Below, in pieces: positions 11,645 to 55,095 of a stretch of DNA of 64,000 nt (position 1 is the first letter of the stretch; each line of letters opens with the position of its first letter). Both the position numbers and the translations under genes were made by a program. Origin of the DNA: Laetmonice hystrix (taxonomy: Eukaryota); assembly GCA_965235115.1 (NCBI GenBank), contig OZ249437.1, positions 42,532,001 to 42,596,000 of the forward strand, in the 5' to 3' direction. Under the pieces are notes generated by a model. It worked only from the letters and a program-made list of their open reading frames with translations, ran no database searches and was not told where the DNA came from.

Positions 11645-12631
11645 CTGGAGTGAGAAAGAGAGAAAGAAGCCTGATTAGGAACCATTAATTCAATCAAATA
11701 AATTATCATAAAGCAAACTCATTACGTGGAAAAATTAAAACCACAACCGAAATATTCCATTAATGGGAAATCATAGCTTGGCATGCAACTTAATAATTGA
11801 AAAACAATGACCACATCCGTGGCGTCATTGACCCAAACGCCACCTAGTTGTGCCTTCACGTCACAAGCGGTTGCTCTCAGAACTCAATAAATAGAAGAAA
11901 CGTGTCATAATAAATCTGTTGGCATCATAAGCAATATTCAGTGGATGTGGTCATGTCATTTAAATGATAACTGGCATTGTAAAACAATAGCTGCTTTGCT
12001 CCCACTCTGCTGAGTATATAAGTACAAAAGACAATATGACAATTATTACAACAGTATATTACAGTGCATGTACACATTATTATGTGAAGCTTATTGTCTT
12101 GAAATTACCAAGCTTCGCATCAATCAATCAAAGCATTTGCATACGAATTTATATGATTCCAAAACAGTTATCGTTCATACTTAAAGCCTGATTATCCCAT
12201 TAATCTTTTATGAGTACCATGAAAATATTAATAAGAGCAGGCCATTTTTATATGCATTACGAGAACATCAAAGAGAGATAGCTTGCAACTTGACAAACCT
12301 TTCCTGTCTTGTCTATGTGATTACGTTTCTGTTTCTGTATATATCTCGACATTATTCTAATATCTTCAGATAAAATGTGCTGTTGTGAACTGCTATATTA
12401 TATAGGTAGTTGACTGTTACTGTCTTACTGATCTCGGTATCATTCTAGGCCTTGTTATTATATTTGGTTTGTGGCCGCTAGATGTGAAAGCATGCAGGTC
12501 CCTACAGTGCTCGTGAGGGGCGACAAGAAGAAGTGCACTGACGATGTGCAATGAAATCGAAGTGGCTGGAAAGGTAAACATAGTTTAGTACTAACTTTGT
12601 ACTCCTGTTTGGGATGAATGTATTGTTGTAC

Positions 12632-12901
12632 CTTTTACTTTTACTTGCGCTACCGACTCGATGTTGCCGAGGTCGGAGGCGGCAACGCATGTGTAGTTGG
12701 CGGACTCACGCACATCGGTGAGCATTAAAACGTTTTTCCCAATGGGAATGTTGTCTTCTGGTGTCAGTTCTAGGGCATTGAGCCTCCATTTCACGTAGGG
12801 CATGGGTGAGCCCACGGCCACACACGTGATGTTCACGGCTCCCCCCGGCATGACTTCCACGCTTTCTGGGGGGATTGAGAAGTGGGGCGGGACTCGTCGT
12901 A
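12632..12901 (-). CDS. Lar: LAR-type receptor PTP coding exon, Ig domain 3 (270 nt, phase 1-1)
   Basis: Branch-like ctaac plus ttattgtttcag|TA CGA acceptor and AAA G|gtacaa donor. Encodes (V)[38 protein letters not shown]...[24 protein letters not shown]. Confidence 0.97.
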
Positions 12902-13837
12902 CTGAAACAATAACAGAAATCATCAGTTAGCTACTCACTAAACAAACGTACAGCATTATATACCACTGACGTACGTCACTCTATCTAATGTACGTCAGCT
13001 GACAGCTCCAAAATAAATGTAAAAAAACATCTTGCAGTGAGAACAGTAAGGATGAAGAAGATGAAAAGAGGGTATCAGTAACACCACTGACAGTCTCGTG
13101 TGAAACTAGAACGGGGAGAAAACTATTCTACAACACTAGACTGACTCATTCTGTGAGGGACGGAAAGGACATAGCGGAGGATCCAACTGAAGGAACGTAA
13201 ACAACGACAACTAAACACGGATGGGAGGAGGAGTGCACTTGAACAACTCAGATCACGTCTTCACGTGTCTCATGCAGGAAATGCCATCTACAACTTCCTT
13301 GATTCCACTTCATGCCATCCTAGTTTAATCAAATCATAAATATAGACTCTATAATAAAATAAGATAGGTCTTTAAGATATTCTTCATTAAACGTCTCAGT
13401 GAAACAAAGATACACAAAATTTTACTTGGTAGAGAAAAATGATGATGTATTGAACTGAGTGAAAGTATTACGGATTATATTTGGAAAGAGAACAAAGATG
13501 AGATATGAACGTCTATACGATGGTCTGTCATCTACTGTAATGTCTGATTACACCAGCCAATGCCAGTCAGTCTACTCTCAAAGTCAAGTCAGTGTCAGTG
13601 GTGTTAGATTGTCTTAACTGACCAGTAGAGGAAGCACAATCAAGCAGTAGTATAATAATGATGACATAATAAATCAAGTGGTAGTGTGGTACAGTGGTTG
13701 GTTGGTGGGTAGCGAGCGGGCATGGCAGGCATGAGTTGGGATTGGTTCCCAGTTTTGAGGGTTTGTTTTTCGGTTAGTACAGTTTTAGTACAGCTCCTTA
13801 GTAGTTGGCTGGACATTCGCGAGACCGAAGAAAATAC

Positions 13838-13900
13838 CTGGGCCAAGTTGCAATGGCTGGTGGGTTGGTGGTAGCGTTGAAGATGGCGGTACAGTCCACC
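13838..13900 (-). CDS. Candidate 63-nt alternative cassette exon in the Ig2-Ig3 (mini-exon B position) intron
   Basis: Acceptor ttattctctctctctaactgtggtttgtgcatag| has a polypyrimidine tract, a CTAAC branch and a TGC. Donor CCA G|gtattt. Phase 1-1 and stop-free, encoding (G)WTVPPSSTLPPTHQPLQLGP(V). No transcript evidence. Confidence 0.5.
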
Positions 13901-14110
13901 CTATGCACAAACCACAGTTAGAGAGAGAGAATAATGTTTCAAAAAACAATGCTTTTAAAGAGAGAATTGGCGCAAGGAAACATTGTTTTGGAAGATAGGC
14001 TGAGCTGCCATTGGCCGAGTGAGAGCGGAGAAGACCATGGTCACAGACTCCGTGGATGTGGAGGGGTGAAGGTGGGGCAGCGGTGATCTGGGACTGAGTG
14101 TCAATGACAA

Positions 14111-16768
14111 TTACTAGGTGGCAGCACAGTCTACACGACCCCCGGCTGCTGCAGGCCCAGCGAGCGCCCAGCCCCAGTACCGCACCAACATCACCAGCAC
14201 CAGGACCATGCTTTGGTTTGCTGCAGCTTTTCACCCATGCTTAATCAATAATCTTATCAAGATCATGATTACTGCACAGCCAATCAGGTATACTTCATTC
14301 GTAAAGGGGGAAGGCTAAAATACTCAGAAACTTCATCTTTTCAGATCCTCTTTTGTAGCTTAAATAAGTTCAGAAAAACTTATTTAAACCCAAACATAAA
14401 GTGCTGGACTTAATAAATAAAACGAGTTCCTGATTAGCAGGTAAAATCAAACAATTTCAGCGTGAGGTTGATGAGTACAGTGACCTCAGTAACTGATTCA
14501 GTTGTAGACAGATCTTGTATATTGACATGTCGGCTATTTTCTAATTTGACTGGAGCATACAGGTTTGGTCATTCACGTGACAAATTGTCCTAATTACTCA
14601 GTTCCCATGCTATGTGTATACTAATTCTCGGGTCCACGAGTAACAAACAAATGCACACGTAGAGAAATGACAGGAAAGAGACCAAAACAGGAATACAATA
14701 TCGACAACTGAATGCTCTGGAAACTTTTCACGAAAAACACGGGAAACAGGTCTTTCTACTGAAACTTTCTGGCTGAAACGGGGAGAACTGACATCTAAAC
14801 GCCAGTATCTCATCACGCTAATAACTGCATCGAATCGGAATTCTGAGCGGATGAATTAGAAAGCGAGAGAGCGTGGATGTTTTCTAGCTTCCCCCCTGCG
14901 CCCCCCTCCCCTCCCTCCCAGACACCTGTCTGATTGTAACAGTCGAGATTTGAGACCGAACATTGGATAACAACACTGGTATGAAGGTTCGAGGGGCTTG
15001 GCGGGCCACTTGTAGCTTTAACCCAGGACAGGCGAGGGCCAAGGTCACCCTGCAGCTTGCTGTGTACATGCAGGTCACAGTGCCCTCAGTGACCGACAGT
15101 CACAGCCACACTATAGCCTAGAAGCTCAATTCAAATGCAAACTGCTCTAGAGCAACTACCGGAAACAAAGCAGAGATCTCTAGCTGGAAAATGATCCCCC
15201 GTCATTGAAAGATTGCTATTTCTCGGCTAGGATCATATCAACTACATGAGCTGTTTTCAATTATTAGTCCATGTCTTCTATGTCGCTTGATTATGCAGGA
15301 CATTGAGAACAACCGTGTGATATAACTAATGATAATCATTAAGACAACATGAGTGTATCCAACACTTGGATTGTGACATCAAAAACTACCGCCTGTCCTG
15401 GAGAGATGCCTACCTGTTTCCCGGGTAACACGTAATAAATCTCCCTCTCTAGTATTGATTAGATCTACAGGCAATAATAATGACGTTGTAGTTTCTCAAA
15501 ATAAACTCTATCCTCTTTCTTAAACACACATACCATTGGTTTTTATCAAGTGTCTCCCGCTAACGTCTGCTTGAATACGTAATACTGAGACCTTCAAAGG
15601 TTTGCGTACACGACCTGGATGACGACAGACCAACCACTGACAGAGTAACGATCTGTACAGACCATAACTACCATGGAATCATGAAAGCTACCCATGCAAT
15701 CAGTGAGACCTTCAAAGGTTTGCGTACACGACCTGGATGACGACAGACCAACCACTGACAGAGTAACGATCTGTACAGACCATAACTACCATGGAATCAT
15801 GAAACATGCAATCAGTACCCAAGTCAGTACTGAACTTCATGCTTTTGTTCTGTTCATCCAAGGCCCTTGGTTCACAAGGAATACTGGACTCAAGGAAGTT
15901 GGACGAGTAACTACTCTACGAGCCTCCCACGTCGTCCACTAGGGGGCGGTTGGACAGCTGAGTTGAGTTATGCAGTGCAGGTTACCATGGTAATATACTG
16001 CCATCCAATGACTGAGGCGACTTACTGAACGTATGTGTCACCCAGCAAACCAATCCCAACCATGCCATCAACTAGAGCTTCACTTTTAGGTCGTTAGGTG
16101 GCAGTGCAGTATTGAACGTCACTAAACAAGGTCAGAAGGAAAACATCACCATAAAACGTGAACGTTCAAGGCAGAGGGAACAGGTCTGAGATAGAGAGAG
16201 AGAGAACTGCATGCTTTCAACTACCCATAAACACTGAACACACACCATAACTTCTCAACAACTACCCACTCTACCTACTACCGACATTAGTTGGATGGCA
16301 AACTGAACCGGTAATGTGTGGCCTTCCAAGGCCAGTCTTGTATATCAGGAAGATAAGTTTACCTTAACTTATAGTCTCTTACAATCAAACCCTCCGTACC
16401 CCCTTACCCCATTCAAAATATATTCATGAAAATATTTCCAACGAAATGGTGGGAAAACTGCTACCTCAATACACATGTTTGAATAGACATCCCGTTTCTC
16501 TCATTAAAAGACCGTGAACACACTTAGATATAACATGTTACTCAAGCTAGCTTGCTGAGGTGATATTACACCCAGCACTTGAAGCTGGGCATGTTGGGCG
16601 TGATACGCCACCTGGTGGTGGAGTAGGAGGAAGGAATATTCCCACCACCCCGTCTGGTGTCTGTGTTTACTATCCACCCTGAGGTCTGCTAGAGTTCCAT
16701 GTCACAACCCAAACTGAAGCCAGAATCACGCTGAGAATGCCGTGCTATCAAAGCGCCCCCTGGTGTCG
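14111..16768. promoter_or_regulatory. Cluster of five CTCF-consensus-like motifs in the Ig2-Ig3 intron
   Basis: + 14111 TTACTAGGTGGCAGCA; + 15936 CCACTAGGGGGCGG; + 16092 CGTTAGGTGGCAGTG (weak); - 16605-16619 ACCACCAGGTGGCGT; - 16752-16768 CGACACCAGGGGGCGCT. Motif match only. Confidence 0.55.
15586..15816. repeat. Tandem duplication, 118-bp period, about 2 copies
   Basis: tgagaccttcaaaggtttgcgtacacg... starts at 15586 and again at 15704. Confidence 0.92.
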
Positions 16769-16922
16769 ATGGCCTTCATCACCCAGCCAGCTGTGTGTGT
16801 GTTTGGGTGTGGGTAAGCGCGGCAGTGCGCGTGAACAATGTACAGACAATGTATGTGCTCCTTAATTCACGTGCAGGTATTAGAGACAGCCCACCCCCAC
16901 AAGTGACGGTAGCGGGACTTAC

Positions 16923-17033
16923 CTCGGACGTAAAGGTTCGCTCCATACGAGTAGGCAACTCCAGCATTGTTTTCAGCCACGCATTCATATTTCCCCTCAT
17001 CAGATTCCTGGCTTCTGCGAATCTGTAGTGAGC
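16923..17033 (-). CDS. Lar: LAR-type receptor PTP coding exon, second part of Ig2 (111 nt, phase 1-1)
   Basis: Acceptor gttgcag|GC TCA and donor CGA G|gtaagt. Encodes (G)SLQIRRSQESDEGKYECVAENNAGVAYSYGANLYVR, with the hallmark DxGKYECVAxN...ANLYVR. Confidence 0.97.
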
Positions 17034-17376
17034 CTGCAACACCAACATGACATCTAATTAAAGTCAGTTTGAACCCGGACTGTAATAAAAACAAAAATCA
17101 CGTTATCCCTACACGACCTTTCAAAACGTGTTGGGATTATAATATCACCGAAATTTGTATGAAATGTGCTCACAGGAAAAAGCGAGTTTTGACTAGTTAA
17201 TACCAGTTTCGAAAAAAAAAGGTTTTACGAGTTCTCTATTCATGAACCCTTGCTGTGCGCGACGGTTTTGTGAGTGATAACTACTGCCAACTCAGAATTA
17301 CAATGTGACATTTGAAAACTAAACATTACAACGTGTAGAATACAATGGTCTGCATGAAACAAGTTGTTTTATAGAA

Positions 17377-17643
17377 CCTTTCTGTTCAACACATTGCCTT
17401 TCTGTTCAACACACTGCCTTTCTGTTCAACACATTGCCTTTCTGTTCAACACACTGCCTTTCTGTTCAACACATTGCCTTTCTGTTCAACACACTGCCTT
17501 TCTGTTCAACACATTGCCTTTCTGTTCAACACACTGCCTTTCTGTTCAACACATTGCCTTTCTGTTCAACACACTGCCTTTCTGTTCAACACATTGCCTT
17601 TCTGTTCAACACACTGCCTTTCTGTTCAACACATTGCCTTTCT
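17377..17643. repeat. Minisatellite, 20-bp unit x13, with strict T/C alternation (40-bp higher-order unit)
   Basis: cctttctgttcaacaca(t/c)tg repeated, alternating acattg/acactg throughout. Confidence 0.97.
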
Positions 17644-17866
17644 CGGTAATGTAAACAGATATTCACATACTACGGTAAGCCAAATTATCATCGTGTTGAT
17701 ATTATTAAAGATCGAAAAACAGTTGTAAGTCTGTGATATTATTAAAGTTATAAGTTAAATTTGACAGAAATCTCCTATAATGACATCGCTTTACCCTCAA
17801 TATTAGATTACATTTTCTTCACTTTTTTCTACTCAGCATTTTCACTCTTTTAAAGAAAACGGAAAC

Positions 17867-18083
17867 TAAAGGGCTGAACCCACCAAGGCGATTCCCCTTG
17901 CGACGCCAATGCGATTTTGACATCACCCTTTTATTTTACTGTAAGTTTGAGATTAAAGGATGGAACCCATTTCCTGAAACGGAGAAGGCCAGCCAGGAAA
18001 AATTTCAGAGTGAAATTCCACCATTACATAAAAAATCGCATGGCCGTCGCAAGGGGAATCGCCTTGGTGGGTTCAGCACTTTA
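17867..18083. mobile_element. About 215-bp MITE with about 50-bp imperfect TIRs, in the Ig2a-Ig2b intron
   Basis: aagggctgaacccaccaaggcgattccccttgcgacg..gcgatttt (from 17869) pairs with aaaatcgc..cgtcgcaaggggaatcgccttggtgggttcagcactt (to 18081). TA on both flanks. Confidence 0.85.
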
Positions 18084-18165
18084 GCCTTTATAAGGCAGTA
18101 AGCTAGCTGTCGAGCCTGGTTCTTTCGATTTGTCTTTGATAAAAAAATCAAACTTCCAGAATTAC

Positions 18166-18342
18166 CTGTCTGCAAGAGCTTCAGCCTTGGGTCGGTCAGG
18201 TCGACAGGAATGAAGTCTTTGAGCCACATGATTGTCGGGTCCGGGTTGCCCACTGCCGAACACAGCATCACCGTGTTTCGATCCTTCTCCACTGCCTTCA
18301 AAGTGGGACTCTCGGTGATACGGGGGTATCCACTCGGCATGG
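18166..18342 (-). CDS. Lar: LAR-type receptor PTP coding exon, first part of Ig domain 2 (177 nt, phase 1-1)
   Basis: Acceptor tgttacag|CC ATG and donor ACA G|gtaatt. Encodes (A)MPSGYPRITESPTLKAVEKDRNTVMLCSAVGNPDPTIMWLKDFIPVDLTDPRLKLLQT(G), which matches the LAR/PTPRD/PTPRS Ig2 pattern (PxGxP...LKxVE...MLC...GNPDP...WxKDFxPVD). Confidence 0.96.
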
Positions 18343-18348
18343 CTGTAA

Positions 18349-18662
18349 CACATCAATATGATAACACCATCATCATCACATCCTAGTCACCATCATCACT
18401 ACACTGCCTTCAGACACATCAACATGATAACACCATCATCATCACATCCTAGTCACCATCATCACTACTACTGCCTTCATAGTGGGACACACCAACATGA
18501 TAACATCATCATCATCACATCCTAGTCACCATCATCACTACACTGCCTTCAGACACATCAACATGATAACACCATCATCATCACATCCTAGTCACCATCA
18601 TCACTACTACTGCCTTCATAGTGGGACACACCAACATGATAACATCATCATCACATCCTAGT
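18349..18662. repeat. CAT-rich tandem repeat with two alternating units of about 65-75 bp, abutting the Ig2a acceptor
   Basis: aacatgataacaccatcatcatcacatcctagtcaccatcatcactac(t)actgccttc followed alternately by agacacatc or atagtgggacacacc. Confidence 0.92.
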
Positions 18663-18837: not shown

Positions 18838-19811
18838 ATGTCTATTTTATAACAGTCACACCTCCGTTATCACAGAACACCTCCATATAAAGAATACTTT
18901 TTTCTATTCCTAAATGAACACGGAATGAACGAGACATCCGTATATAGGGAATTAAAAGACTTATAACATACCGTATCCATGGGAAAGATTCCCAGGAACT
19001 TGTTGTGTTTGTATGATGATGGAAAGATCCCTTTAATTATACCGTGCCACCCCGAAATGTGTCGCGGATAATGTTCTCCCGAATTCTATAATTACGTTAA
19101 CAACATCCTTTTATAGGAAATGTCTCAAGGACTAGCTACCATTAATATTACCACGGGACATGCATTAACGAAAACAGTAGTCCAAGTAGTCTAAGTCTTT
19201 GAGGAATTTTTTGGTTATGAAGACTGATATGATTTCCGAATTAAGGGAATGATTTAAGAGGGACTCAGGCTTAATTCATGAATCTATAATCTCCTACACA
19301 GGGACAGGAGATTCACTGGCAGGCTTTATTTAATTACACTGCATTTCCTAAATTAATGGCAACACTTCCAACAAATATTGTACAACCGACCTTCAACCAA
19401 ACGAGATGAAAGGGCCTAGTACCGTTGTGTATTGAATTTTACAAATTTAGGCCAACTAGGACTTGAAGTGAACGGCCACATTTGAATAGGGGCCTGATAT
19501 GACTGACTTACTGATATTGTTACTCTTGACAGCTCTATGGGCACGATCTTACAGTAACTGGTCTATATACAGCCCAACCCTTTTATCCGTTTCTCTATGG
19601 TAAACAGTACATATATTTGTCATTTTTGCCGTACATCTCACATGTTTTTTTGGGGGGGGGGACAAAAAGTGCACCGTTTGGCTCAGTATCTGCAACGCTG
19701 CGGCAGTCGATGCTGTCGCCACCACGTGGCTGGAGGCCACAAACCAATCGGTACCGGTGACTCGGCGGGGAAGGCTGGTTAGCTCCGAGTAGGGAGGGCA
19801 TCACAGGATTC

Positions 19812-20205
19812 GGAGGCCGCCTTCCATTGCCCACCCAATGGGGAGGCCACCTTCCATTGCCTACCCAATGGGGAGGCCGCCTTCCATTGCCCACCCAATG
19901 GGGAGGCCACCTTCCATTGCCTACCCAATGGGGAGGGCGCCTCCCATTGCCCACCCAATGGGGAGGCCGCCTTCCATTGCCCACCCAATGGGGAGGCCGC
20001 CTTCCATTGCCCACCCAATGGGGAGGCCGCCTTCCATTGCCCACCCAATCGGGAGGCCGCCTTCCATTGCCCACCCAATCGGGAGGCCGCCTTCCATTGC
20101 CCACCCAATGGGGAGGCCGCCTTCCATTGCCCACCCAATCGGGAGGCCGCCTTCCATTGCCCACCCAATCGGGAGGCCGCCTTCCATTGCCCACCCAATG
20201 GGGCG
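19812..20205. repeat. Minisatellite, 30-bp unit x about 13
   Basis: gggaggccgccttccattgcccacccaat(g/c) repeated; explains the repetitive ORFs in 19595-20284. Confidence 0.96.
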
Positions 20206-21054
20206 GTCTTCCTCCCCTTGCCCACTCAATTTTTTAACAATTCCAACGGACTATAAGAGACACTATCCCAACTATGACAGATGACATATTTTCCTACCTC
20301 GACATCCCCTTCCCAACCCCACCTTGAACCCCCCCCCCCCCACTTCCCACCCCACCACGACCACTACAAGACCGTTTCCTTCTGACACGAATCATCACTC
20401 AACCCCACCTTTCTATGTTCAAGAAGCAAGTGCTTATTTAGTTTGTCCACCAACATGCTATCTTCCATTTACTCACATCATGACGGGTCTCAAAGACAGC
20501 CCGTTTCACCATTAACCAATATATGTGTGTCGGTATGCAGATTAGTAGAGCGGCATGTTTGTCTGAATGGGTTTGTGCCACATCCATTTCCCTGCGTACA
20601 TTACGCGTGACAGGCAGTGTTTTAGTGGCAATAACTTGTGTATGCGTGCCTGAAAATGGCTACAAGGCGGGGAGACTACGCCCGGGGTGTGCTTATGTCA
20701 GTCAGACCGTCGGACCACGCCCACGTCTGGACCTTCTCCACCTATTGTGGTATTCACCGACACCGACATGTCAATCCCCACTCAACCTTCGCCTATCAAT
20801 CTTACAACTGAATACTACCTGTTGTCAAACAATACCCTCCGCTAGCAAAGAAATACTTCAATTCTATAATCGGATTTTCAGTCAATACAAAGGTTACACT
20901 TTGCCAGCTTGAATGTAACCATGGAAAGCATTTACACAATAAATTGCTATTAGAAGTCGAATAAATAGGTCAGAGTTGTACGATATGGCCAACTTTTCTT
21001 CCTCCGATTTATGTTACGGCCATATTAGGTAATATGGTGTACGTATTGCTGTAT

Positions 21055-25900: not shown

Positions 25901-27181
25901 AAAACCTGCAAATGTCGGTACATGCTCTGTTTCTTAATCCAACCCTCCTTTTTTCGGGTTTCTTTTCGACAACCACAAGTTGTTTCTAAAGGTCAAAGGT
26001 ATGAAGTGTTGCTCAGAGATCCGCTTCATTTTGTATGGGCTATGGGTCATTTGGTGCTCAGCGAGCATGGCCGTGTTGAGAGCCCGTCGATTTCACCAAA
26101 AAGGTTACCATGCATGTAAAACCTGGAGCGTAGATCCGTCACAATATTTGCCGTTCTCGGAGTCTCTGGGTTCGCTCAGTGCTCATGTGTGTGTGGTTTT
26201 TTAATATTTTAGAAGGCAGTCTCGATCCAGGCAGGTTCTGATGCCTTTTTAGCACTAGATTCGTGCCATACGAGTACTGGTAGAACCATATCCTTCGGTT
26301 GTGCCACCATGAGGGTCAACCAACGGTAATGGGTGCTCTCAGGCTCGGGCTAAAGTTCTTCTTCAGCAAACCTGCACACACCAAAATAATAGCATACTCA
26401 ACCAAACTGAAGAGGTTGTATGGTACGTGGTTCTGGCACGTTTATTGCTCCCTCCCCCTCTCTCTGCTGAATTTATATGATGTCGTTATTGACAATTTGA
26501 TCATCTCTGTATAAATAAATCAAAAGCTGTTATTTCAAACAGCTTTCTGTCGGCAATGAAACAGTGGTGTGACACTGTCAGGTTTGACGTGTCTCAAACA
26601 TGCAGGTGAGTGAACTCTACACTCTACTGCGTCCGATCTTTGCTTTATATGGCTTTGAGTGACCCATACACCACACGCACACCCCAACATAAACATACAC
26701 TCACACCCCACCTCACACTCACACACCACTTGGAACTGCTGTGTGAGAGCGGCCTGGACAGGCAAGTATTGATTCTCTCCACACACATGGAGAGACACGA
26801 GTTCTGTAGGTCTCTCTACCTCTCTCCGTTCTCGCTATGACCCTGGCGAGCGTGCGGGTCTCAGCCTTGCTGCCATGCATCACTTCTGTCTTGCTCTAGT
26901 TCCTTTGTTCTGAACGGGAATTTGCTGATGTCGGAACCCCGCATCTGCCGTGGAACCCATGGGAAGTTTTTGAGGGTTTCTCTGCATGCAATATTGACAT
27001 GATCCCACTTTCTTCTCGGGAGACTTACGACAGACGATCCTTCATCCTTTACTAGTTATCACTAGTCTTTTTATTCTGCTGACAGGCTGCCTCACTTCTC
27101 TTCACAAACAAAGGTTACCTAGATCATCGCTCAAAGTAAAAACAACAATTATCTGCAGCATCCTGTATATATATACATTAT

Positions 27182-27568
27182 GTACATGACTGGGGAGGAC
27201 TGGGTCCCTCTGCCCCGATGGCACTCCACGGTAGGTGGGGTGACGACCCTTACAGAACGTAAATGACTGGGGAGGACTGGGTCCCTCTGCCCCGATGGGA
27301 CTCCACGGTAGGTGGGGTGACGACCCTTACAGAACGTACATGACTGGGAAGGACTGGGTCCCTCTGCCCCGATGGGACCCCACGGTAGGTGGGGTGACGA
27401 CCCTTACAGAACGTACATGACTGGGGAGGACTGGGTCCCTCTGCCCCGATGGCACTCCACGGTAGGTGGGGTGACGACCCTTACAGAACGTACATGACTG
27501 GGGAGGACTGGGTCCCTCTGCCCCGATGGCACTCCACGGTAGGTGGGGTGACGACCCTTACAGAACGT
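27182..27568. repeat. Minisatellite, 77-bp unit x5
   Basis: gtacatgactggggaggactgggtccctctgccccgatgg...cttacagaac starts at 27182, 27259 and onward. Confidence 0.96.
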
Positions 27569-28651
27569 GACAACCTGAATAATTTGTCGGTGCCGACTTA
27601 AAACAGAGTCCTCCTTGGGAAGCCTTTACCAGGCCAACTGAGGGCACCTGACCCTACGGCCGCCACCAGTTACAGAACCGTATCAGTAAGTCTGGGGCCG
27701 CCGCTAGCGCCGGGAACGCCCCCTGGTGATGGATTGAGGGCGAGGACAGTCTCAGCTTCCACCTAGACACAAGCTGACATCGTCTGTTGAGAATAATTAC
27801 TATATATTAACGACGAGAAATCGTTACCAAACAACCCACCTGTTTTCCTTTTTTTCACCACTCCAGGTAAACACATACGCACACTAACCAAGATACTGGC
27901 CCGTTTCCCCCGTCACCAGTTCACAAACCATCACTTCAACGAACCAAATCATCCAAGACTTGACATTAATCTACACATTACAACACGGTCGATTTGGAAG
28001 GAAAATGGGACAGGGGGCTTATTGTGGCACGGTGTCGATTCCTGAGCTATGTTTGTCCTACCGGCCTCCTTGACAGCTGGTATTTTCCCATGCAAGACGT
28101 AATGCATCGATTCTCCGCTGGCTTCTGACGACGGTCGTAGGACCTATACACCCAACTAAAACTCTAATGCCCATATTTCACACCTTTTTACGGCATTGAT
28201 ACGTAATGCCTATTAATATTAAAGCAAAAATCACAATTTACTAATAAGACCTCGAATACTCGGTAATATAACTTCCAAAAGAAAAAGTGAGTATACATCC
28301 CATAAGTTCGTAAGTCTCTCAGTGAATATCTCCGGCTTAAAGACATGTCGTTCTATCGTATTGCAATTGCCCGCCAAGTGTTAGAGTGAAATACAAGACT
28401 TGCCAATCTGATTTGCACCGGTATATGGACACAAAAGATACACTGGTGATTCAGTAAGTCATGTTCATTTCAAGACAATGGGAGGGCTTGAGGCAGTACC
28501 TGCTATTGAAGGCCTAATCTAGTGCACGCCTACATTTCGTACAATGGTATAGCCAGCAGTGATTTTGAACAATTCTAAAGGTTAGCACATGAATTTCTTG
28601 GATTTCATCAGAGCAGCTATACGCTGCAGAAGAGACGCCTCGGAAATGTTT

Positions 28652-32600: not shown

Positions 32601-33741
32601 GAAAACCTGACTTCATTGGAGATTTAATTTTGAACCAATCTATACAAGGACAATGTTCATCGGTAGACTTTTTCTCAGAATTCTTTCCTTGAAGTTGCCT
32701 TTGAAATATGAATTCTCGACGAATAGACATAAGTTATTTCAACAAAGATCATTGCACTGATGTAGATATAAGCGGCGATCGTTTCCCTGCGGCCAGTCTG
32801 ACATTAAAAATGGATGGCAGAAAGTATGTGATAACTTGATCAGTGAACTGGCATCACCTAGCAATCCACAATCAAGTCGAGTAGTTCGTGACATATATGT
32901 CAGTCACAAATTGCTGATTCAAACACTCCCATTACCAACCCAGCCCATTTGGTCATGTCCAAAAATGGGATGGCTCACTGTGGCAGGCCGAGGATCAGTC
33001 ATCTCATCAACGGTTCATGCTTGGCTGTCAGACTGCGGCCAATCAGAACGTATTGTCCGCAATAAATGCCAATCAGCGAATATTTCCTGATGCGGTCCCT
33101 TTTGAGTTGGGTGTAGCAGTCCTGACCGCAGTACCCATAATGTGGTCATTTCCTATGGCTGCCTTTCCGTGCTCCGTTCTGTCGGAAGTAAACCAGGCAT
33201 GGTGGCTGCCCAGCCCTTGCTTATACCGCCAAATCCCTCGACCGACACATAAATCATCCACTCCATTTCCTACGCAACTTTGTTGACCTGGTAAATGGGT
33301 CTGTGCGCCGGGTGCAGCTCCCCTTGGTAGCTGGCGGGCGCTGCAATCGTTCACAACACCTCTGAAGCAGGGAAGACAAATGCTGGGCGCCCTACGTGAA
33401 ACATGCCAGCCACCAGGAAACGGGTTGGTGGACCGTGGAGGTGGACCGCTGGACCTGCATCAGTGGCCACTTGTGTGGTCACTTGGGTGCATGCCAATGG
33501 TCAGCATGAGAAGAACGACGGACGGTGGGTCGTCATAAAGTAGAGGTTTACACACCACCCTTGTCTCTCTAGGTCCATAACACCCGGCGAAACCGTGGCA
33601 AAACGCTTGCTGTGTCCCACTCGCGGGTCAATTCCTATTTCTTGTTATCACTTGGGCTCAAGTCAATTCAAGCACACCTTTCGTATTGCAAGAGTCAGAG
33701 TAAACGAGGTGGCGGGGAAAAAACATTCGCATTTTGCGCTC

Positions 33742-33953
33742 GAGTTACCCAACATGTTTGAAGTGTTACCCAACATGTTTGAAGTGTTACCCAACATGTT
33801 TGAAGTGTTACCCAACATGTTTGAAGTGTTACCCAACATGTTTGAAGTGTTACCCAACATGTTTGAAGTGTTACCCAACATGTTTGAAGTGTTACCCAAC
33901 ATGTTTGAAGTGTTACCCAACATGTTTGAAGTGTTATCCAACATGTTTGAAGT
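33742..33953. repeat. Minisatellite, 21-bp unit x about 10
   Basis: gttacccaacatgtttgaagt repeated; explains ORFs 33595-34144. Confidence 0.96.
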
Positions 33954-36900
33954 GTCGCCTTGAATATTGCTGCAGATTGCAATTCCAACTCGTGGCTACA
34001 CCTCGGTGTAATTGTTTCCTAGTAACTGCCCCATACCCGGGCCCCCTTGGCGTCGTGACCCTGGCGGCTGACACCATAACCAAGGGTAACTCGTCCTCTG
34101 TCTCCATCCCAGGTCGAGAGTTAATCCTACAGCCAGCCACCTAACGACCCACCAGGGAGGACCCCTGCCCGAGACCCTGGCCTCCGCCCCTTTTGTCCAC
34201 CGTCCCTCCCCCCGGCAAACCTTTCCCTTTCAATGGCCAGCTCAGACCATAACCCAGCGTCTCAAACACCCGACAACAATCGACGTCTTTCATAGAGCCC
34301 GGATGGGCAATGATTGCTTCTTCCCAATGCTTAATGCCCAGCACGGCACCGTCGTCAATGATCACTTATCATTACAGTCTCACTCCATATACAGGCCTCA
34401 AGCCGTCTTGGGTCGGCCCAAAGATTGATACTCCCACATTAGCAGGTGATTCCCATGCAGCGGGAAAGCTGGTATTAAACCTCAGTATAGCTAGTTACAC
34501 GTGGTATTGGTCCATGCTGAATGCTGGAGCTCTTGGCGACACTAATGGAACCTTCTTCTTCAGGAGGTCCGCGGCACAGGAGGTCAAAAGCCCCTTCATC
34601 CAAGCAATGCGGCCAGTGAAGAGCATGGCGCCTGGCCTTAACCCCTTCCGTCAATAGGTTACCCGGCTTTCATCCTTGGCCGAGGTGCCTCCTTCAAGTT
34701 GCCTCAATTGCAGCATTTCAACTTGGACAATTGAGTCATTATTCATGAAGCTTGCTTGACTGACAACCTTCACTGTAGTCATTCCTCAAGAGATTTTTTC
34801 TGTGAAATACAAACTGGACAAGTAGACCCGACTCTGTGGTCTACATGACACCAAAGACCTTATTCAAATGGAATTATGACCCCCAGAGGCCGTCTTTGCC
34901 TGGAAATAAGCATCTAAATTTCAATCACTGTGGCTGGGGCCCTCTGATTGGTGTCTATTCAGCTCCACATGAGATCATCCTTGGACTTTTTCAACGGTTA
35001 ATTCACGTTCTTAGCATTCCATGCGATCCCGGAACGCTGAAATACCACATGGGATCGACCCATCTGGTGGACTTTATACCCAGAACCAATACTCATTTAA
35101 AGGCACTTGTGTAGATAATGAACTTTACTTCGACAATCGTTACACAAGTTATTCTGTCCAGAAATTATCCTTTTACCCAAAAGGCGCTATTGATAAATAT
35201 GTATTCCTGTGGTACCTGCTCTCTGTACTCAGTGACCTACAAGCGGTTTGATCGAGTGTGATTACCAAAGGCTGACGCAATGAAAGACTGCCTTGGATGG
35301 GCCAGCTTTGTTCACCCGTCCAGCCACTAACCGCTGCAGTACCTGCTACACCAAACTCACTCCATCCCTTTCTGTCTTCTACTGTCCTCCAACGAATGGT
35401 CGCCTCCAAATCAATCCCGATACAATCGTATTGACAGAGACGGCTGTCAATACGGGCTCGTGCCGTCCGAGCCATTCAGTCCCAAGCCGCTGCCAGTCAG
35501 GCTGGCTGGCCTGGCAGGCCGGGCAGGGCCTCGGCACAGGGAGTCATGCAAGAGGATCACAACCATCTTCTCAGCACCACAGAAGGTCATCGGCAATCCA
35601 GGGGACGCTAATATGTGCCTGACCTCCTGCAATCGGGGCTAGGCCAGGGCCTTCTTCACCTGTGGTCGAGAGAGACAGGGCGCTGTACCTCAACCACACG
35701 AATATATCAGGCTTGGTCACATCCATCCTCTTGCTGCTTCATTATGCAGGCCACAGCGACGTACTGGAGGCCTCCAGGGGCCACCTCCAGCACATTGTCC
35801 TTCATGGGCCCGAGACAGAGACGTTCTGATGGAGCAAGTATAATCATTCACATAGCCGGGAGGCACAGGGCCCTACAGTCTCCACCCAAATCCAATCGGC
35901 ACCCTGTAAATGCAGCAGGGGGACGAACCCCGCTCTGATTAAATAAACTCCCCACTCCCTGCTGTATTATTGCCCGGATAACCCATCAGCCAAACCAGCA
36001 GCTGACCCCCTGACCTTCCGACCGGCACTTAACCCCGGCACCCTCTGTCCTGGTGGCTAACCTCGGACAGACTGCTGTTTAATAGACACTCCCTGCGCAC
36101 TCCAACATAACACCAGCCCAGAAAAACATGTGAACGTCTGACGATGAAAAACTGCCTGTCGTTCTCCCTATACAGGTAATATTGCCTTGTCAGTGCTGAT
36201 TGAAACCAAACCACCTGGAATCACACAATCTCTGACAAGGATTAACAATGGGCACCTTCAACAATATGCCTTCCAACTGGTCAGCTGCGAACTTTAAGTG
36301 TTACAAACTGATCTAGCCTACCATTGTATAACCACTAGAGGTGTGGAACCATGAAAAGCTGGCCCGATGACCGCTGTCCATTTAACCACAGCTGACCCCT
36401 CTATAGGTATGTAGTATACTCGCATTATACGACATACCGACAAACCTGACGGGCTGGCTGGCCTGCGCTCTCCTAAAGTTGGGCGGAATCTTGGCTTGCT
36501 TCCAATCAATACCTCCCAGGATCAGCAGCCCTGACCTCTCCATCATTTGGCAACAACAAGCTCGTAATGTCGACATTATTGGCTTCATTACAATGTCAAC
36601 CATGACATGTCAGTGACCAGCTTTATCATGTAATACTTTTTCTCTCAAGAGTATCCGTAAAATAAAAGATTGGAGGTTTTTTTCTACAGCACACGAGAGC
36701 CAGGTATATTGGAATCAGCAAGGTTACATCCCTTGCTGTGTGGTAACTTTGGTCTTTATTCGATCACCTCTCAATTCGTCAGCTGAATGATAAATCAAAG
36801 GCTGGCTCTGTGCTACCTCTGGGCTGCACTACTCCGCTGTCATTATTCACCTCCTTGCCTCATCTGCCAAGAGTCCATTATAACGAGAGCCTGTCACTCA

Positions 36901-52500: not shown

Positions 52501-53694
52501 ATTTCCTGTTCCATGAGAAATCCACTCAGGAAGTAGCCTCAGGGTTGGTCGTATCATGTCGGCTTGTTTTTCCCGGGTATGTAGATATAATATGTAAGTC
52601 TATATAGCCTCAGGATGCTCTCTTACAACTATCTTTTTTATTGCTGCCTGATGAATATGGCCACTAGGAAGGTAGCGTGATGCCGCATGCAATCACAATC
52701 AAATACATACAAAGGCAATGGTTTGCTATCCTTTCTGTCGCAGCTTGGCGTGCGAGATTTAAAACTACTGCCATTCTCTATATACTCTACCCACGCACTT
52801 CAACAACTGCCATCCAAAAACATGTCCCAAGTGTGCATAGTTTGGTAGCCCTGAGGCATTTTACTGAAAGAGCAGGGTTCGCTCCTTCTGATGTTCTCCG
52901 GCTGGTCTCCGAACGTTTCACGTTTGGTTTGAGCGATGAACTTCGCCTGTAAATCGTAATCACTAAGGCCATGTGCATCTTCTCAAGTCTAGAAATGATC
53001 GTAAAGTCCTTGAGCATCACTCAAGTAATTCACTCCTATAATAATTCAGTGGTGACTCTTGATGTATTCAGCTAGACTGAGTGATTCTGGCCGAATTATT
53101 CTGTCTTCTACATCCATGGACATGAAACAGGATTTTACGGTTAGGCCACAAATCTATCACGTGATTCACACCCTGGAGACCAGAGACCTGCGCATGGACT
53201 AGACGACCTGCGCATGGACTAGACGACCTGTAAAATATTCACGATTAATATCTGTATCGACAGACAGACATTTTCTATCCTTCTCTTCCCTCGTTATTTG
53301 TGACAAGAAGAACGGGCCGGCTGTCTCCCAAAGACAAAGTCTGGGGTGGACCCAGGAGAACAAATACCACTTGGCCATCTCTCACCGACTCTGGTAACTA
53401 CATCTCAATCTCAATCAATACGCCAGCTGTAGAACTCCTAGACGACAGTGGGTTGGGAGTTGGGGAAGCCGGCCCACTGGAGGTGTAGGGTGGAGGTGGG
53501 GGATGGGGGTGGGGGTGGGTGGTCTGTACCCCGAGGTCCGGCCTAAGGTTACCGTTCACATTCACCCAGACTGCCCGCCAAGGACCAGTGTCTAAGACCG
53601 GGCCGCACTGGTCTCTGTTGAAATACAAGTCCCCTTTATTTCCCCGGCCTAATACGCTGTGAAGCCAGGGATCACTTCAGATAACATCGATTCT

Positions 53695-54948
53695 GGACCA
53701 TGCTTCTGTTCCTCTGTGACCAGTGCATCCCTTAGACCCCTGCCTCCTGTCGACCGTCTGACCGGGACCATGCTTCTGTTCCTCTGTGACCAGTGCATCC
53801 TTAGACCCCTGCCTCCTGTCGACCGTCTGTCCGGGACCATGCTTCTGTTCCTCTGTGACCAGTGCATCCCTTAGACCCCTGCCCCCTGTCGACCGTCTGT
53901 CTGGGACCATGCTTCTGTTCCTCTGTGACCAGTGCATCCCTTAGACCCCTGCCCCCTGTCGACCGTCTGTCTGGGACCATGCTTCTGTTCCTCTGTGACC
54001 AGTGCATCCCTTAGATCCCTGCCCCCTGTCGACCGTCTGTCTGGGACCATGCTTCTGTTCCTCTGTGACCAGTGCATCCCTTAGACCCCTGCCCCCTGTC
54101 GACCGTCTGTCTGGGACCATGCTTCTGTTCCTCTGTGACCAGTGCATCCCTTAGACCCCTGCCCCCTGTCGACCGTCTGTCCGGGACCATGCTTCTGTTC
54201 CTCTGTGACCAGTGCATCCCTTAGACCCCTGCCTCCTGTCGACCGTCTGTCCGGGACCATGCTTCTGTTCCTCTGTGACCAGTGCATCCCTTAGACCCCT
54301 GCCTCCTGTCGACCGTCTGTCCGGGACCATGCTTCTGTTCCTCTGTGACCAGTGCATCCCTTATACCCCTGCCCCCTGTCGACCGTCTGTCCGGGACCAT
54401 GCTTCTGTTCCTCTGTGACCAGTGCATCCCTTTGACCCCTGCCCCCTGTCGACCGTCTGTCTGGGACCATGCTTCTGTTCCTCTGTGACCAGTGCATCCC
54501 TTAGACCCCTGCCTCCTGTCGACCGTCTGTCTGGGACCATGCTTCTGTTCCTCTGTGACCAGTGCATCCCTTTGACCCCTGCCCCCTGTCGACCGTCTGT
54601 CTGGGACCATGCTTCTGTTCCTCTGTGACCAGTGCATCCCTTATACCCCTGCCCCCTGTCGACCGTCTGTCTGGGACCATGCTTCTGTTCCTCTGTGACC
54701 AGTGCATCCCTTAGACCCCTGCCTCCTGTCGACCGTCTGTCTGGGACCATGCTTCTGTTCCTCTGTGACCAGTGCATCCCTTAGACCCCTGCCTCCTGTC
54801 GACCGTCTGTCTGGGACCATGCTTCTGTTCCTCTGTGACCAGTGCATCCCTTAGACCCCTGCCTCCTGTCGACCGTCTGTCTGGGACCATGCTTCTGTTC
54901 CTCTGTGACCAGTGCATCCCTTAGACCCCTGCCTCCTGTCGACCGTCT
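53695..54948. repeat. Minisatellite, 70-bp unit x about 18
   Basis: ggaccatgcttctgttcctctgtgaccagtgcatcccttagacccctgcc(c/t)cctgtcgaccgtctgtc(c/t)g repeated; explains all ORFs in 53649-55045. Confidence 0.98.
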
Positions 54949-55095
54949 GGGACAGGCCAGCCGCAACCATCAGTCGTCTAGATTAAGACCTTTCAGCGGA
55001 AATCATACCATTCGTCAAGACAAACAAACCTTGCACAGACAATAATAATATATTGACCTGAGGGTTAACAAAGGCTCTCCCGGAAAATACACTGC

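What the first reader, a model, noticed from the sequence alone, without database searches (positions are those of the whole stretch)
13838..13900. Candidate non-vertebrate 'mini-exon B': a 63-nt Pro/Ser/Thr linker cassette between Ig2 and Ig3
Seen in sequence: a complete acceptor (pyrimidine tract, CTAAC branch, TGC, TAG) and a CAG|GTATTT donor enclose a stop-free 63-nt phase 1-1 segment. Inclusion would give ...[35 protein letters not shown].... Established: in vertebrate PTPRF/PTPRD/PTPRS the phase-1 intron at YVR|VRRVPP hosts the 12-nt mini-exon B (ELRE), which lengthens the Ig2-Ig3 linker and controls binding to Slitrk, IL1RAPL1 and SALM ligands. Inference: this lineage may use the same intron for an unrelated 21-residue, possibly O-glycosylated hinge, i.e. 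an independently evolved splice code for synaptic partner choice.
Basis: partly seen in the sequence, partly recalled or inferred. Interest (0 to 1): 0.8.

Follow-up and report, generated by a model that had tools for sequence, protein, structure and literature searches.

The report
Conserved optional hinge exon in worm LAR phosphatase
A 63-base exon-like segment, kept in frame in at least eight related worms and paired with a matching RNA box nearby, sits in a worm LAR receptor phosphatase gene exactly where vertebrates insert mini-exon B, but the only RNA available skips it.

Summary
On the minus strand, tag|GG…CAG|gtattt bounds a 63-nt, phase 1-1, stop-free segment (13900-13838). It lies in the 4021-nt intron between Ig2b (ends 16923, …YVR) and Ig3 (starts 12901, VRRVPPHF).

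The single sequence proves nothing. The intron holds 320 comparable open AG..GT segments, and this one ranks third.

Comparison with relatives changes the picture. Eight worm lineages, otherwise unalignable in this intron, keep the same element:
- a branch-point-like CTAAC, a GU-rich spacer and YAG at the acceptor;
- CAG|GTA at the donor;
- a T(C/T)GNGAATG motif about 15-25 nt downstream.

Exon lengths are 63, 63, 27, 84, 105, 87, 60 and 57 nt. All are multiples of three, open in phase 1 and rich in Pro/Ser/Thr.

Five lineages also carry an exon core (CACCAGCCA) complementary to a single downstream intron box (GCATTGGCTGGTG; window 13563-13551).

Against the exon reading:
- the one spliced RNA contig set from this animal joins Ig2b directly to Ig3;
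- no database protein carries the insert;
- all 10 codon differences from the closest relative change the amino acid.

Best reading (about 0.6): a real, usually skipped, RNA-structure-controlled cassette that lengthens the Ig2-Ig3 hinge. It appears independent of vertebrate meB. Inclusion and function are untested.

The parts
16923..17033 (-). Ig2b exon of the LAR-type RPTP gene (…[36 protein letters not shown] + G). The constitutive donor GAG|gtaagt follows at 16922.
   Evidence: Sequence. The spliced RNA contig of run X4 covers 16923-17032 and joins it to Ig2a at 18165 and to Ig3 at 12901.
12902..16922 (-). Phase-1 intron between Ig2 and Ig3 (4021 nt) that hosts the cassette.
   Evidence: Joint 12901->16923, 'skips 4021', in run X4. 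Sequence.
13901..13934 (-). Cassette acceptor region: pyrimidine tract, CTAAC (13921-13917), GU-rich spacer TGTGGTTTGTGC, then TAG.
   Evidence: 26 of 30 nt identical to L010. CTAAC + GU-rich + YAG recurs in L014, L011 and L008, with no AG between CTAAC and the acceptor.
13838..13900 (-). Candidate cassette exon: 63 nt, phase 1-1, encoding GWTVPPSSTLPPTHQPLQLGP.
   Evidence: Orthologous 3n, open cassettes: L010:8486-8548, L011:2790-2873, L014:943-1047, L028:3142-3228, L009:9098-9157, L008:2677-2703, L100:5125-5181.
13850..13862 (-). Exon core CACCAGCCATTGC, complementary to the downstream intron box.
   Evidence: It is invariant in window, L010, L014 and L028, and reads CACCAGCCAAAGC in L011. 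It pairs with the box in both the MFE and centroid folds.
13814..13837 (-). Cassette donor GTATTT (13837-13832) and the conserved downstream intron motif TCTCGCGAATG (13824-13814).
   Evidence: CAG|GTA and TCGNGAATG are invariant in five aligned species. A variant TTGNGAATG occurs in L028 and L008, and TCTCGAGAATG in L100.
13543..13582 (-). Conserved intron block that holds the box GCATTGGCTGGTG (13563-13551), the reverse complement of the exon core. It lies 279 nt after the cassette donor.
   Evidence: blastn block against L010, alignment, complementarity and uniqueness.
12632..12901 (-). Ig3 exon ([17 protein letters not shown]…KVK), 270 nt, phase 1-1.
   Evidence: Sequence. RNA contig X4 covers 12632-12756 and the joint at 12901. 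Pfam I-set/Ig_3 is recorded on the orthologous ORFs.

Best explanation
The segment is a genuine, lineage-restricted alternative cassette exon of the worm's only LAR-type receptor tyrosine phosphatase gene. When included, it inserts a flexible Pro/Ser/Thr-rich spacer between Ig2 and Ig3. The spacer is 21 residues here and 9-35 in relatives. This is the same spot where vertebrate PTPRF/D/S insert the 4-residue mini-exon B.

Inclusion appears to be held low by default and set at the RNA level by three features:
- an unusual conserved 3' splice region (CTAAC, a GU-rich spacer, YAG);
- a conserved T(C/T)GNGAATG motif about 15-25 nt past the donor;
- a 12-of-13-bp duplex between the exon core CACCAGCCAUUGC and a single downstream intron box GCAUUGGCUGGUG, which loops out the cassette's 5' splice site.

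Shown: conservation, frame preservation, the complementary boxes, and skipping as the assembled isoform. Inferred: that the exon is ever included, that the duplex represses it, and that the longer hinge changes ligand binding as meB does in vertebrates.
For: (1) Conservation. The intron is otherwise unalignable between the window and its closest relative L010 (exons about 85% nt identity). Only two blocks align: cassette plus flanks (13926-13800, 84%) and the box (13582-13543). More distant worms match a profile of the element. These have branch lengths of 0.3-0.7 substitutions per site in coding exons. nhmmer E-values are 1e-9 to 1e-16 and 2e-6 for L100.

(2) Splice signals. The AG and the GT are kept in all eight lineages. 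In five, CTAAC is followed by an AG-free stretch up to the acceptor.

(3) Frame. Exon lengths are 63, 63, 27, 84, 105, 87, 60 and 57 nt, all multiples of 3. All are open in phase 1, whereas the other two frames carry stops in some species.

(4) Composition. Pro/Ser/Thr-rich in every lineage, including those that lost the core.

(5) RNA pairing. The core and the box co-occur in 5 of 5 lineages and are both absent in 3 of 3. Each 9-mer occurs once per 7-20 kb locus, always 231-866 nt downstream of the cassette donor, with duplex dG of -24 to -30 kcal/mol. The helix appears in both the MFE and centroid folds.

(6) Position. It is identical to vertebrate meB (…YVR-ELRE-VRRVPP in P0295, EQRE in P0277). 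The hinge-lengthening role of meB is documented (PMC6078854).

(7) Copy number. The element is single-copy in the genome, so it is not a repeat.
Against: - No inclusion was seen. Run X4 (spliced contigs, same sample) joins 16923 directly to 12901 at depth 22 and has no contig over 13682-16833.
- Transcript-derived fragments of relatives (P0082, P0242, P0243) also lack an insert. So do 74 of the 78 spliced LAR proteins retrieved: two carry vertebrate meB and two read through the intron.
- Between the window and L010, the 10 differing codons are all non-synonymous and none is synonymous. In Ig3 the counts are 44 synonymous and 2 non-synonymous. Constraint is therefore on nucleotides (splicing signals, duplex), not on the residues.
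- The apparent peptide motif THQPL coincides with the duplex core.
- 3n indels could partly reflect slippage in CCA/ACC-like triplet-periodic sequence.
- Acceptor assignment in L009, L028 and L100 is less certain. L100 has a competing AG that would give 47 nt.
- The donor lacks G at +5.
Confidence: 0.6

Rival explanations
1. A conserved exon-like splicing-regulatory module (a decoy or pseudo-exon with an RNA duplex) that helps process or regulate the Ig2b-Ig3 intron but is not meant to reach mature mRNA or be translated.
For: Only skipping is seen in RNA. The substitution pattern shows nucleotide-level, not amino-acid-level, constraint: 0 synonymous and 10 non-synonymous codon changes. The most conserved parts are splice signals, an intron motif and the two halves of an RNA duplex.
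Against: A non-translated element has no reason to stay a multiple of three and stop-free in phase 1 through at least five independent length changes. The chance is roughly (1/3)^5 for length. Shuffles gave an open phase-1 frame in 45-73% of trials per lineage (five lineages). The Pro/Ser/Thr-rich reading is also kept in lineages that lost the duplex core (L008, L009, L100).
Confidence: 0.25
2. Some other conserved non-coding function, such as a transcriptional enhancer, a small RNA gene or a feature of the opposite strand.
For: The element is a conserved island in an otherwise unalignable intron. Low-depth RNA contigs of X4 lie nearby at 13282-13432 and 13486-13636.
Against: Rfam finds nothing at the cassette. 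It gives only a sub-threshold snoZ30 match at 13490-13586 on the + strand (22.8 bits against a gathering score of 50) with no proper C/D boxes. RNAalifold finds no conserved local hairpin at the donor. The conserved edges coincide exactly with YAG| and |GTA on the gene's own strand. The opposite strand offers no splice sites at the block's edges. X4 has zero depth over the cassette.
Confidence: 0.1
3. A chance pseudo-exon: an AG..GT open stretch with no function.
For: There are 320 comparable segments in this one intron. Two of them outscore the cassette on a crude splice matrix.
Against: None of the other candidates is conserved. This one is found with its flanks in eight lineages that are saturated at synonymous sites.
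Confidence: 0.03

Closest known systems
Vertebrate LAR-RPTP mini-exon B (meB; ELRE in PTPRD/PTPRS, DQRE in PTPRF)
   Same: Same gene family. Same protein position: between …YVR and VRRVPP in the Ig2-Ig3 linker. Both are frame-preserving optional cassettes. The expected effect of lengthening the hinge matches what is documented for meB with Slitrk, IL1RAPL1/IL-1RAcP and SALM5 (PMC6078854).
   Different: 27-105 nt here against 12 nt. The sequence is unrelated: Pro/Ser/Thr-rich and uncharged against the charged ELRE. It is restricted to one worm clade and absent from the other worms, molluscs, arthropods and amphioxus sequences retrieved. Inclusion has not been demonstrated. The ligands Slitrk, SALM and IL1RAPL1 were not looked for in this genome.
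Alternative exons controlled by long-range intramolecular RNA pairing (e.g. Dscam1 docking/selector sites, FGFR2 IAS2-ISAR; recalled from memory, not checked here)
   Same: A conserved complementary pair of boxes, one in or at the regulated exon and one hundreds of nucleotides away in the intron. The pair is kept across species while the sequence between them is not.
   Different: This is a single cassette rather than a mutually exclusive cluster. One arm lies inside coding sequence. There is no compensatory double change yet, only co-presence and co-loss plus a shifted mismatch in L011. The direction of the effect is unknown.
Conserved alternative cassette exons in general
   Same: The flanking intron sequence is highly conserved (26/30 nt upstream; 11 of the first 12 nt after the donor, then near-identical past a 1-nt indel). 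Synonymous change is suppressed, length is 3n, and the exon is A/C-rich.
   Different: Amino-acid identity is barely constrained, and there is no transcript evidence.

Membership tests
LAR-type (type IIa) receptor protein tyrosine phosphatase gene | Ig1-3 followed by FN3 repeats, with the characteristic Ig2/Ig3 junction …NLYVR|VRRVPP | tested here: met
   The Ig2a, Ig2b, Ig3 and FN3 exons lie on the minus strand. The nearest named proteins are LAR/PTPRF/D/S of molluscs, annelids and vertebrates. There is a single copy in the genome. The phosphatase domains lie outside the stretch I examined.
Vertebrate mini-exon B (meB) | Insert located between YVR and VRRVPP in the Ig2-Ig3 linker | tested here: met
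   P0295 reads …NLYVR-ELRE-V-RRVPP and P0277 carries EQRE. The cassette would insert at the same split codon.
Vertebrate mini-exon B (meB) | 12-nt exon encoding ELRE/DQRE-type charged residues, homologous across vertebrates | tested here: not met
   63 nt (27-105 in relatives), Pro/Ser/Thr-rich, with no similarity to ELRE.
Vertebrate mini-exon B (meB) | Alternative inclusion demonstrated in mRNA | tested here: not met
   Only the skipping junction 16923->12901 is present in run X4. None of the 78 spliced proteins carries such an insert. Contigs can miss minor isoforms.
Vertebrate mini-exon B (meB) | Inclusion changes binding to trans-synaptic ligands | not testable with these tools
   Needs binding assays. 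The tools would not accept a spliced protein by reference, so nothing was modelled.
Conserved alternative cassette exon | Canonical splice sites and flanking intron conserved across species | tested here: met
Conserved alternative cassette exon | Length a multiple of 3 and open in the host frame in all orthologues | tested here: met
   63, 63, 27, 84, 105, 87, 60 and 57 nt. The acceptor choice in L100, L009 and L028 is less certain.
Conserved alternative cassette exon | Purifying selection on the encoded residues | tested here: not met
   0 synonymous and 10 non-synonymous codon differences against L010, compared with 44 and 2 in Ig3.
Exon regulated by long-range RNA pairing | Complementary boxes conserved in position and sequence | tested here: met
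   The core and a single box are present in five lineages and both are absent in three.
Exon regulated by long-range RNA pairing | Compensatory (both-sides) changes, or mutational proof | tested here: inconclusive
   Both arms are nearly invariant. L011 only shifts the single mismatch. L009 (0/300 shuffles; 6/200) and L100 (3/200) instead pair the exon end and donor with an upstream intron box.

The most novel reading that the evidence does not exclude
One worm clade independently evolved a switchable hinge at exactly the Ig2-Ig3 position that vertebrates regulate with mini-exon B. It uses a long Pro/Ser/Thr spacer whose inclusion is gated by an exon-intron RNA duplex (replaced by a different donor-masking duplex in some lineages). 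This would be convergent evolution of a splice-controlled ligand-selectivity switch in a presynaptic organiser.
Probability: 0.35. Interest if true: 0.75.

Novelty: new variant of a known kind. Interest (0 to 1): 0.55.

Why it matters
LAR-RPTP mini-exons are the textbook case of a splice code that selects synaptic partners. In the papers I could search they are treated as a vertebrate feature. A conserved optional exon at the same hinge in worms would suggest that tuning the Ig2-Ig3 linker is a recurrent evolutionary solution.

It would also give a tractable invertebrate system. The gene is single-copy, the cassette is large and easy to detect by PCR, and there is an explicit pair of RNA boxes to mutate. 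This would let one ask how hinge length alters receptor function. The exon-core/intron-box pairing is also a clean candidate example of coding sequence constrained by RNA structure.

Tried and rejected
- Chance pseudo-exon. Plausible from one sequence but rejected by conservation.
- Repeat or transposon origin. The region is single-copy in the 627-Mb assembly.
- Paralogue comparison. There is only one LAR-type gene.
- RNA runs. Two searches found only one sample. X1-X3 are DNA and X4 is spliced RNA contigs without the cassette.
- Annotated or transcript-derived proteins with the insert. One search of 1.8 billion representatives and three word-index searches found none.
- Recursive splice site. 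The acceptor is not followed by GT, and the first exon bases are not conserved (TAG|GG, TAG|AA, CAG|TG).
- snoRNA or other Rfam family. Only a sub-threshold snoZ30 hit elsewhere in the intron.
- Conserved local hairpin at the donor. None found. The 401-nt region is not unusually stable overall (z = 0.30), although the specific long-range helix is predicted.
- A general second pairing between the start of the intron and the cassette donor. It stands out against shuffles only in L009 and L100, not in the window, L010 or L028.
- A resolved species tree to date the exon. Only 837 coding columns were available, giving a star-like tree apart from window + L010.
- About 10 metagenome-derived worms with complete short Ig2b-Ig3 introns (289-1870 nt), plus L018 and L019, have no homologue.
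- Structure or complex modelling with and without the insert was not run.

Full report
**Observation.** The host gene is a LAR-type receptor tyrosine phosphatase on the minus strand.
- Ig2b ends …CTT TAC GTC CGA G|gtaagt at 16923.
- Ig3 begins …ttgtttcag|TA CGA CGA GTC CCG at 12901.
- The intron between them is 4021 nt and phase 1.
- At 13900-13838 the sequence reads ttattctctctctCTAACtgtggtttgtgcatag|GGTGG…GGCCCAG|gtattttc.

The enclosed 63 nt are stop-free in phase 1 and encode GWTVPPSSTLPPTHQPLQLGP.

**Chance.** Taken alone, the segment is not remarkable. The intron contains 320 AG..GT segments of 9-300 nt that are multiples of three and open in the required phase, and 123 of them are at least 60 nt. 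With a rough splice-site matrix the cassette ranks 3rd. Its acceptor ranks only 30th of 244 and its donor 7th of 309 (no G at +5). The DNA is single-copy in the 627-Mb assembly, and the genome has one LAR-type gene.

**RNA.**
- Two run searches found one sample only.
- Laying the four runs on 12500-18400 showed that X1-X3 are genomic.
- X4 holds spliced contigs. One 321-nt contig (depth 22, no mismatches) joins Ig2a 18165 to Ig2b 17032 and Ig2b 16923 to Ig3 12901.
- The assembled isoform therefore skips the cassette, and X4 has no contig anywhere in 13682-16833.
- Contigs can miss minor isoforms, so this shows the default form, not absence.
- Three transcript-derived fragments from related worms (P0082, P0242, P0243) also read …[11 protein letters not shown].
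- Of 78 spliced LAR proteins recovered from four database searches, 74 have no insert. Two have vertebrate ELRE/EQRE at exactly this position, and two are intron read-through.

**Comparative evidence.** Single-exon ORF fragments matching Ig3 led to genomic loci of relatives. Earlier scan notes call the animal a polychaete or annelid. I did not verify this.

Against the closest relative, L010 (coding exons about 85% nt identity), the whole intron aligns in only two places:
- window 13926-13800, which is the cassette with both flanks (84%);
- window 13582-13543.

In L010 the exon is again 63 nt. The upstream 30 nt are 26/30 identical. The first 12 nt after the donor are 11/12 identical, and the flank stays nearly identical past a 1-nt indel, through the GAATG motif.

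A profile of the element then found it in much more distant worms, whose coding exons are saturated at silent sites (branch lengths 0.3-0.7):

| Locus | Length | Peptide |
|---|---|---|
| L014/L015 | 105 nt | GPSIDRTTPTSTRRPPRRGRPRLPTPTHQPLHTGS |
| L011-13 | 84 nt | ETTVTPPLRSTLPPTSTHQPKHYTSSGP |
| L028 | 87 nt | GDARSTTIASPTRSPPTVSTHQPLHNTGS |
| L009 | 60 nt | VPPPTSPPSTTPTTGSTTGS |
| L008 | 27 nt | DDEVTTPSS |
| L100 | 57 nt | VSLRPSPTSSVTSPSFSTA (acceptor less certain) |

nhmmer E-values run from 1e-9 to 1e-16, 2e-6 for L100. L008 gave only a marginal profile hit (E = 0.24) and was identified through its donor, the downstream GAATG motif and the CTAAC/GU-rich acceptor.

All eight lengths are multiples of three and all are open in phase 1. 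The other two frames contain stops in some species.

Shared architecture:
- a pyrimidine tract;
- CTAAC in five lineages, followed by an AG-free, GU-rich spacer and YAG;
- CAG|GTA at the donor;
- T(C/T)GNGAATG about 15-25 nt into the intron.

The element is absent from L018 and L019. It is also absent from about ten metagenome-derived worms whose complete Ig2b-Ig3 introns are only 289-1870 nt. The holders are exactly the loci whose Ig3 is at least 91% identical in protein to the window. The exon therefore looks clade-restricted and unrelated to vertebrate meB.

The second conserved block contains GCATTGGCTGGTG (window 13563-13551). This is the reverse complement of the exon core CACCAGCCATTGC (13862-13850), with 12 of 13 positions pairing around one U·U.
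- The same pair occurs in L010, L014, L028 and L011.
- Each 9-mer is present exactly once in its 7-20 kb locus.
- The box always lies 231-866 nt downstream of the cassette donor.
- Predicted duplex energies are -24 to -30 kcal/mol.
- The helix appears in both the MFE and centroid folds of 13930-13530, although that region as a whole is not unusually stable.
- L008, L009 and L100 lack both the core and the box.
- L009 instead has a 13-nt perfect complement to its exon end plus donor, 127 nt into the upstream half of the intron (0 of 300 shuffles). L100 has a weaker analogue (3/200). The window and L010 do not.

**What this does to the coding argument.** Between the window and L010, ten cassette codons differ and all ten change the residue. 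The eleven identical codons show no silent change at all. The Ig3 exon, by contrast, shows 44 silent and 2 replacement differences. Constraint therefore acts on nucleotides (splice signals, duplex arm, probably an A/C-rich enhancer), not on residue identity. The 'THQPL' motif is the duplex core read as protein.

The case for translation rests on three things: the unbroken 3n and open-frame record through at least five independent length changes, the Pro/Ser/Thr composition kept even where the core is gone, and the exact host-frame compatibility. Slippage in triplet-periodic CCA/ACC sequence could inflate the 3n record somewhat.

**Interpretation.**
- About 0.6: a real, normally skipped cassette that lengthens the Ig2-Ig3 hinge by a loosely constrained flexible spacer, with inclusion set by the RNA duplex and flanking motifs.
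- About 0.25: an exon-like regulatory module that is never productively included.
- About 0.1: some other non-coding role.
- About 0.03: chance.

The functional analogy to meB rests on the literature (PMC6078854) and on position only. meB lengthens the hinge, relieves steric clash with Slitrk and positions Ig3 for IL1RAPL1/IL-1RAcP and SALM5. Two literature searches found no description of an alternative exon at this site outside vertebrates.

**Verdict.** Inclusion, glycosylation and a partner-choice role are untested. It is a new variant of a known kind.

Noticed in passing
window 17819-18212 (intron between Ig2a and Ig2b): A short stretch has summed contig depth of about 200,000-500,000 in the DNA runs, with many rearranged joints. 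It is a very high-copy repeat family sitting in the intron equivalent to the vertebrate meA site.
   Followed up: no
window 18165 -> 17032 (Ig2a-Ig2b junction): The X4 RNA contig joins Ig2a directly to Ig2b (…LLQTG-SLQIR…) with no insert at the position of vertebrate mini-exon A. blastn found no conserved block in that intron between the window and L010.
   Followed up: partly
window 11943-12037 (intron between Ig3 and the first FN3 exon): An AT-rich block is 92% identical to L010:10815-10907, better conserved than the neighbouring exons. I could see no clear splice sites or open frame, and its function is unknown.
   Followed up: partly
window 15586-15804: A perfect 118-nt tandem duplication (1.9 copies, 100% identical) lies inside the Ig2-Ig3 intron, with raised depth in the DNA runs.
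   Followed up: no
window 17377-17643: A 20-nt tandem repeat of 13.4 copies (CCTTTCTGTTCAACACATTG) at 95% identity.
   Followed up: no
window 13282-13432 and 13486-13636: Two 151-nt low-depth (4-5) RNA contigs of X4 lie in the intron between the cassette and Ig3. The second covers the duplex box. No RNA contig lies upstream of the cassette. This could be pre-mRNA or a stable intron fragment.
   Followed up: no
L023, L025, L032, L038, L040, L041, L042 (Ig2b-Ig3 intron 5' splice site): Many metagenome-derived relatives that lack the cassette use a GC donor (GAG|gcaagt, gcaggt or gcgagt) at the Ig2b-Ig3 intron. The window and the cassette-bearing loci I checked use GT.
   Followed up: no
L034 (Ga0099809_10083789): In this contig the Ig2 end and the Ig3 start are contiguous. 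It is either a transcript-derived contig in a metagenome collection or a case of intron loss. It has no insert.
   Followed up: no
window about 53650-54970, minus-strand frames: A long tandem array of about 210-nt units gives repeated about 69-residue open frames (GMHWSQRNRSMVPDRR…). Similar short-period arrays lie at about 19600-20250, 27100-27600 and 33700-34000.
   Followed up: no
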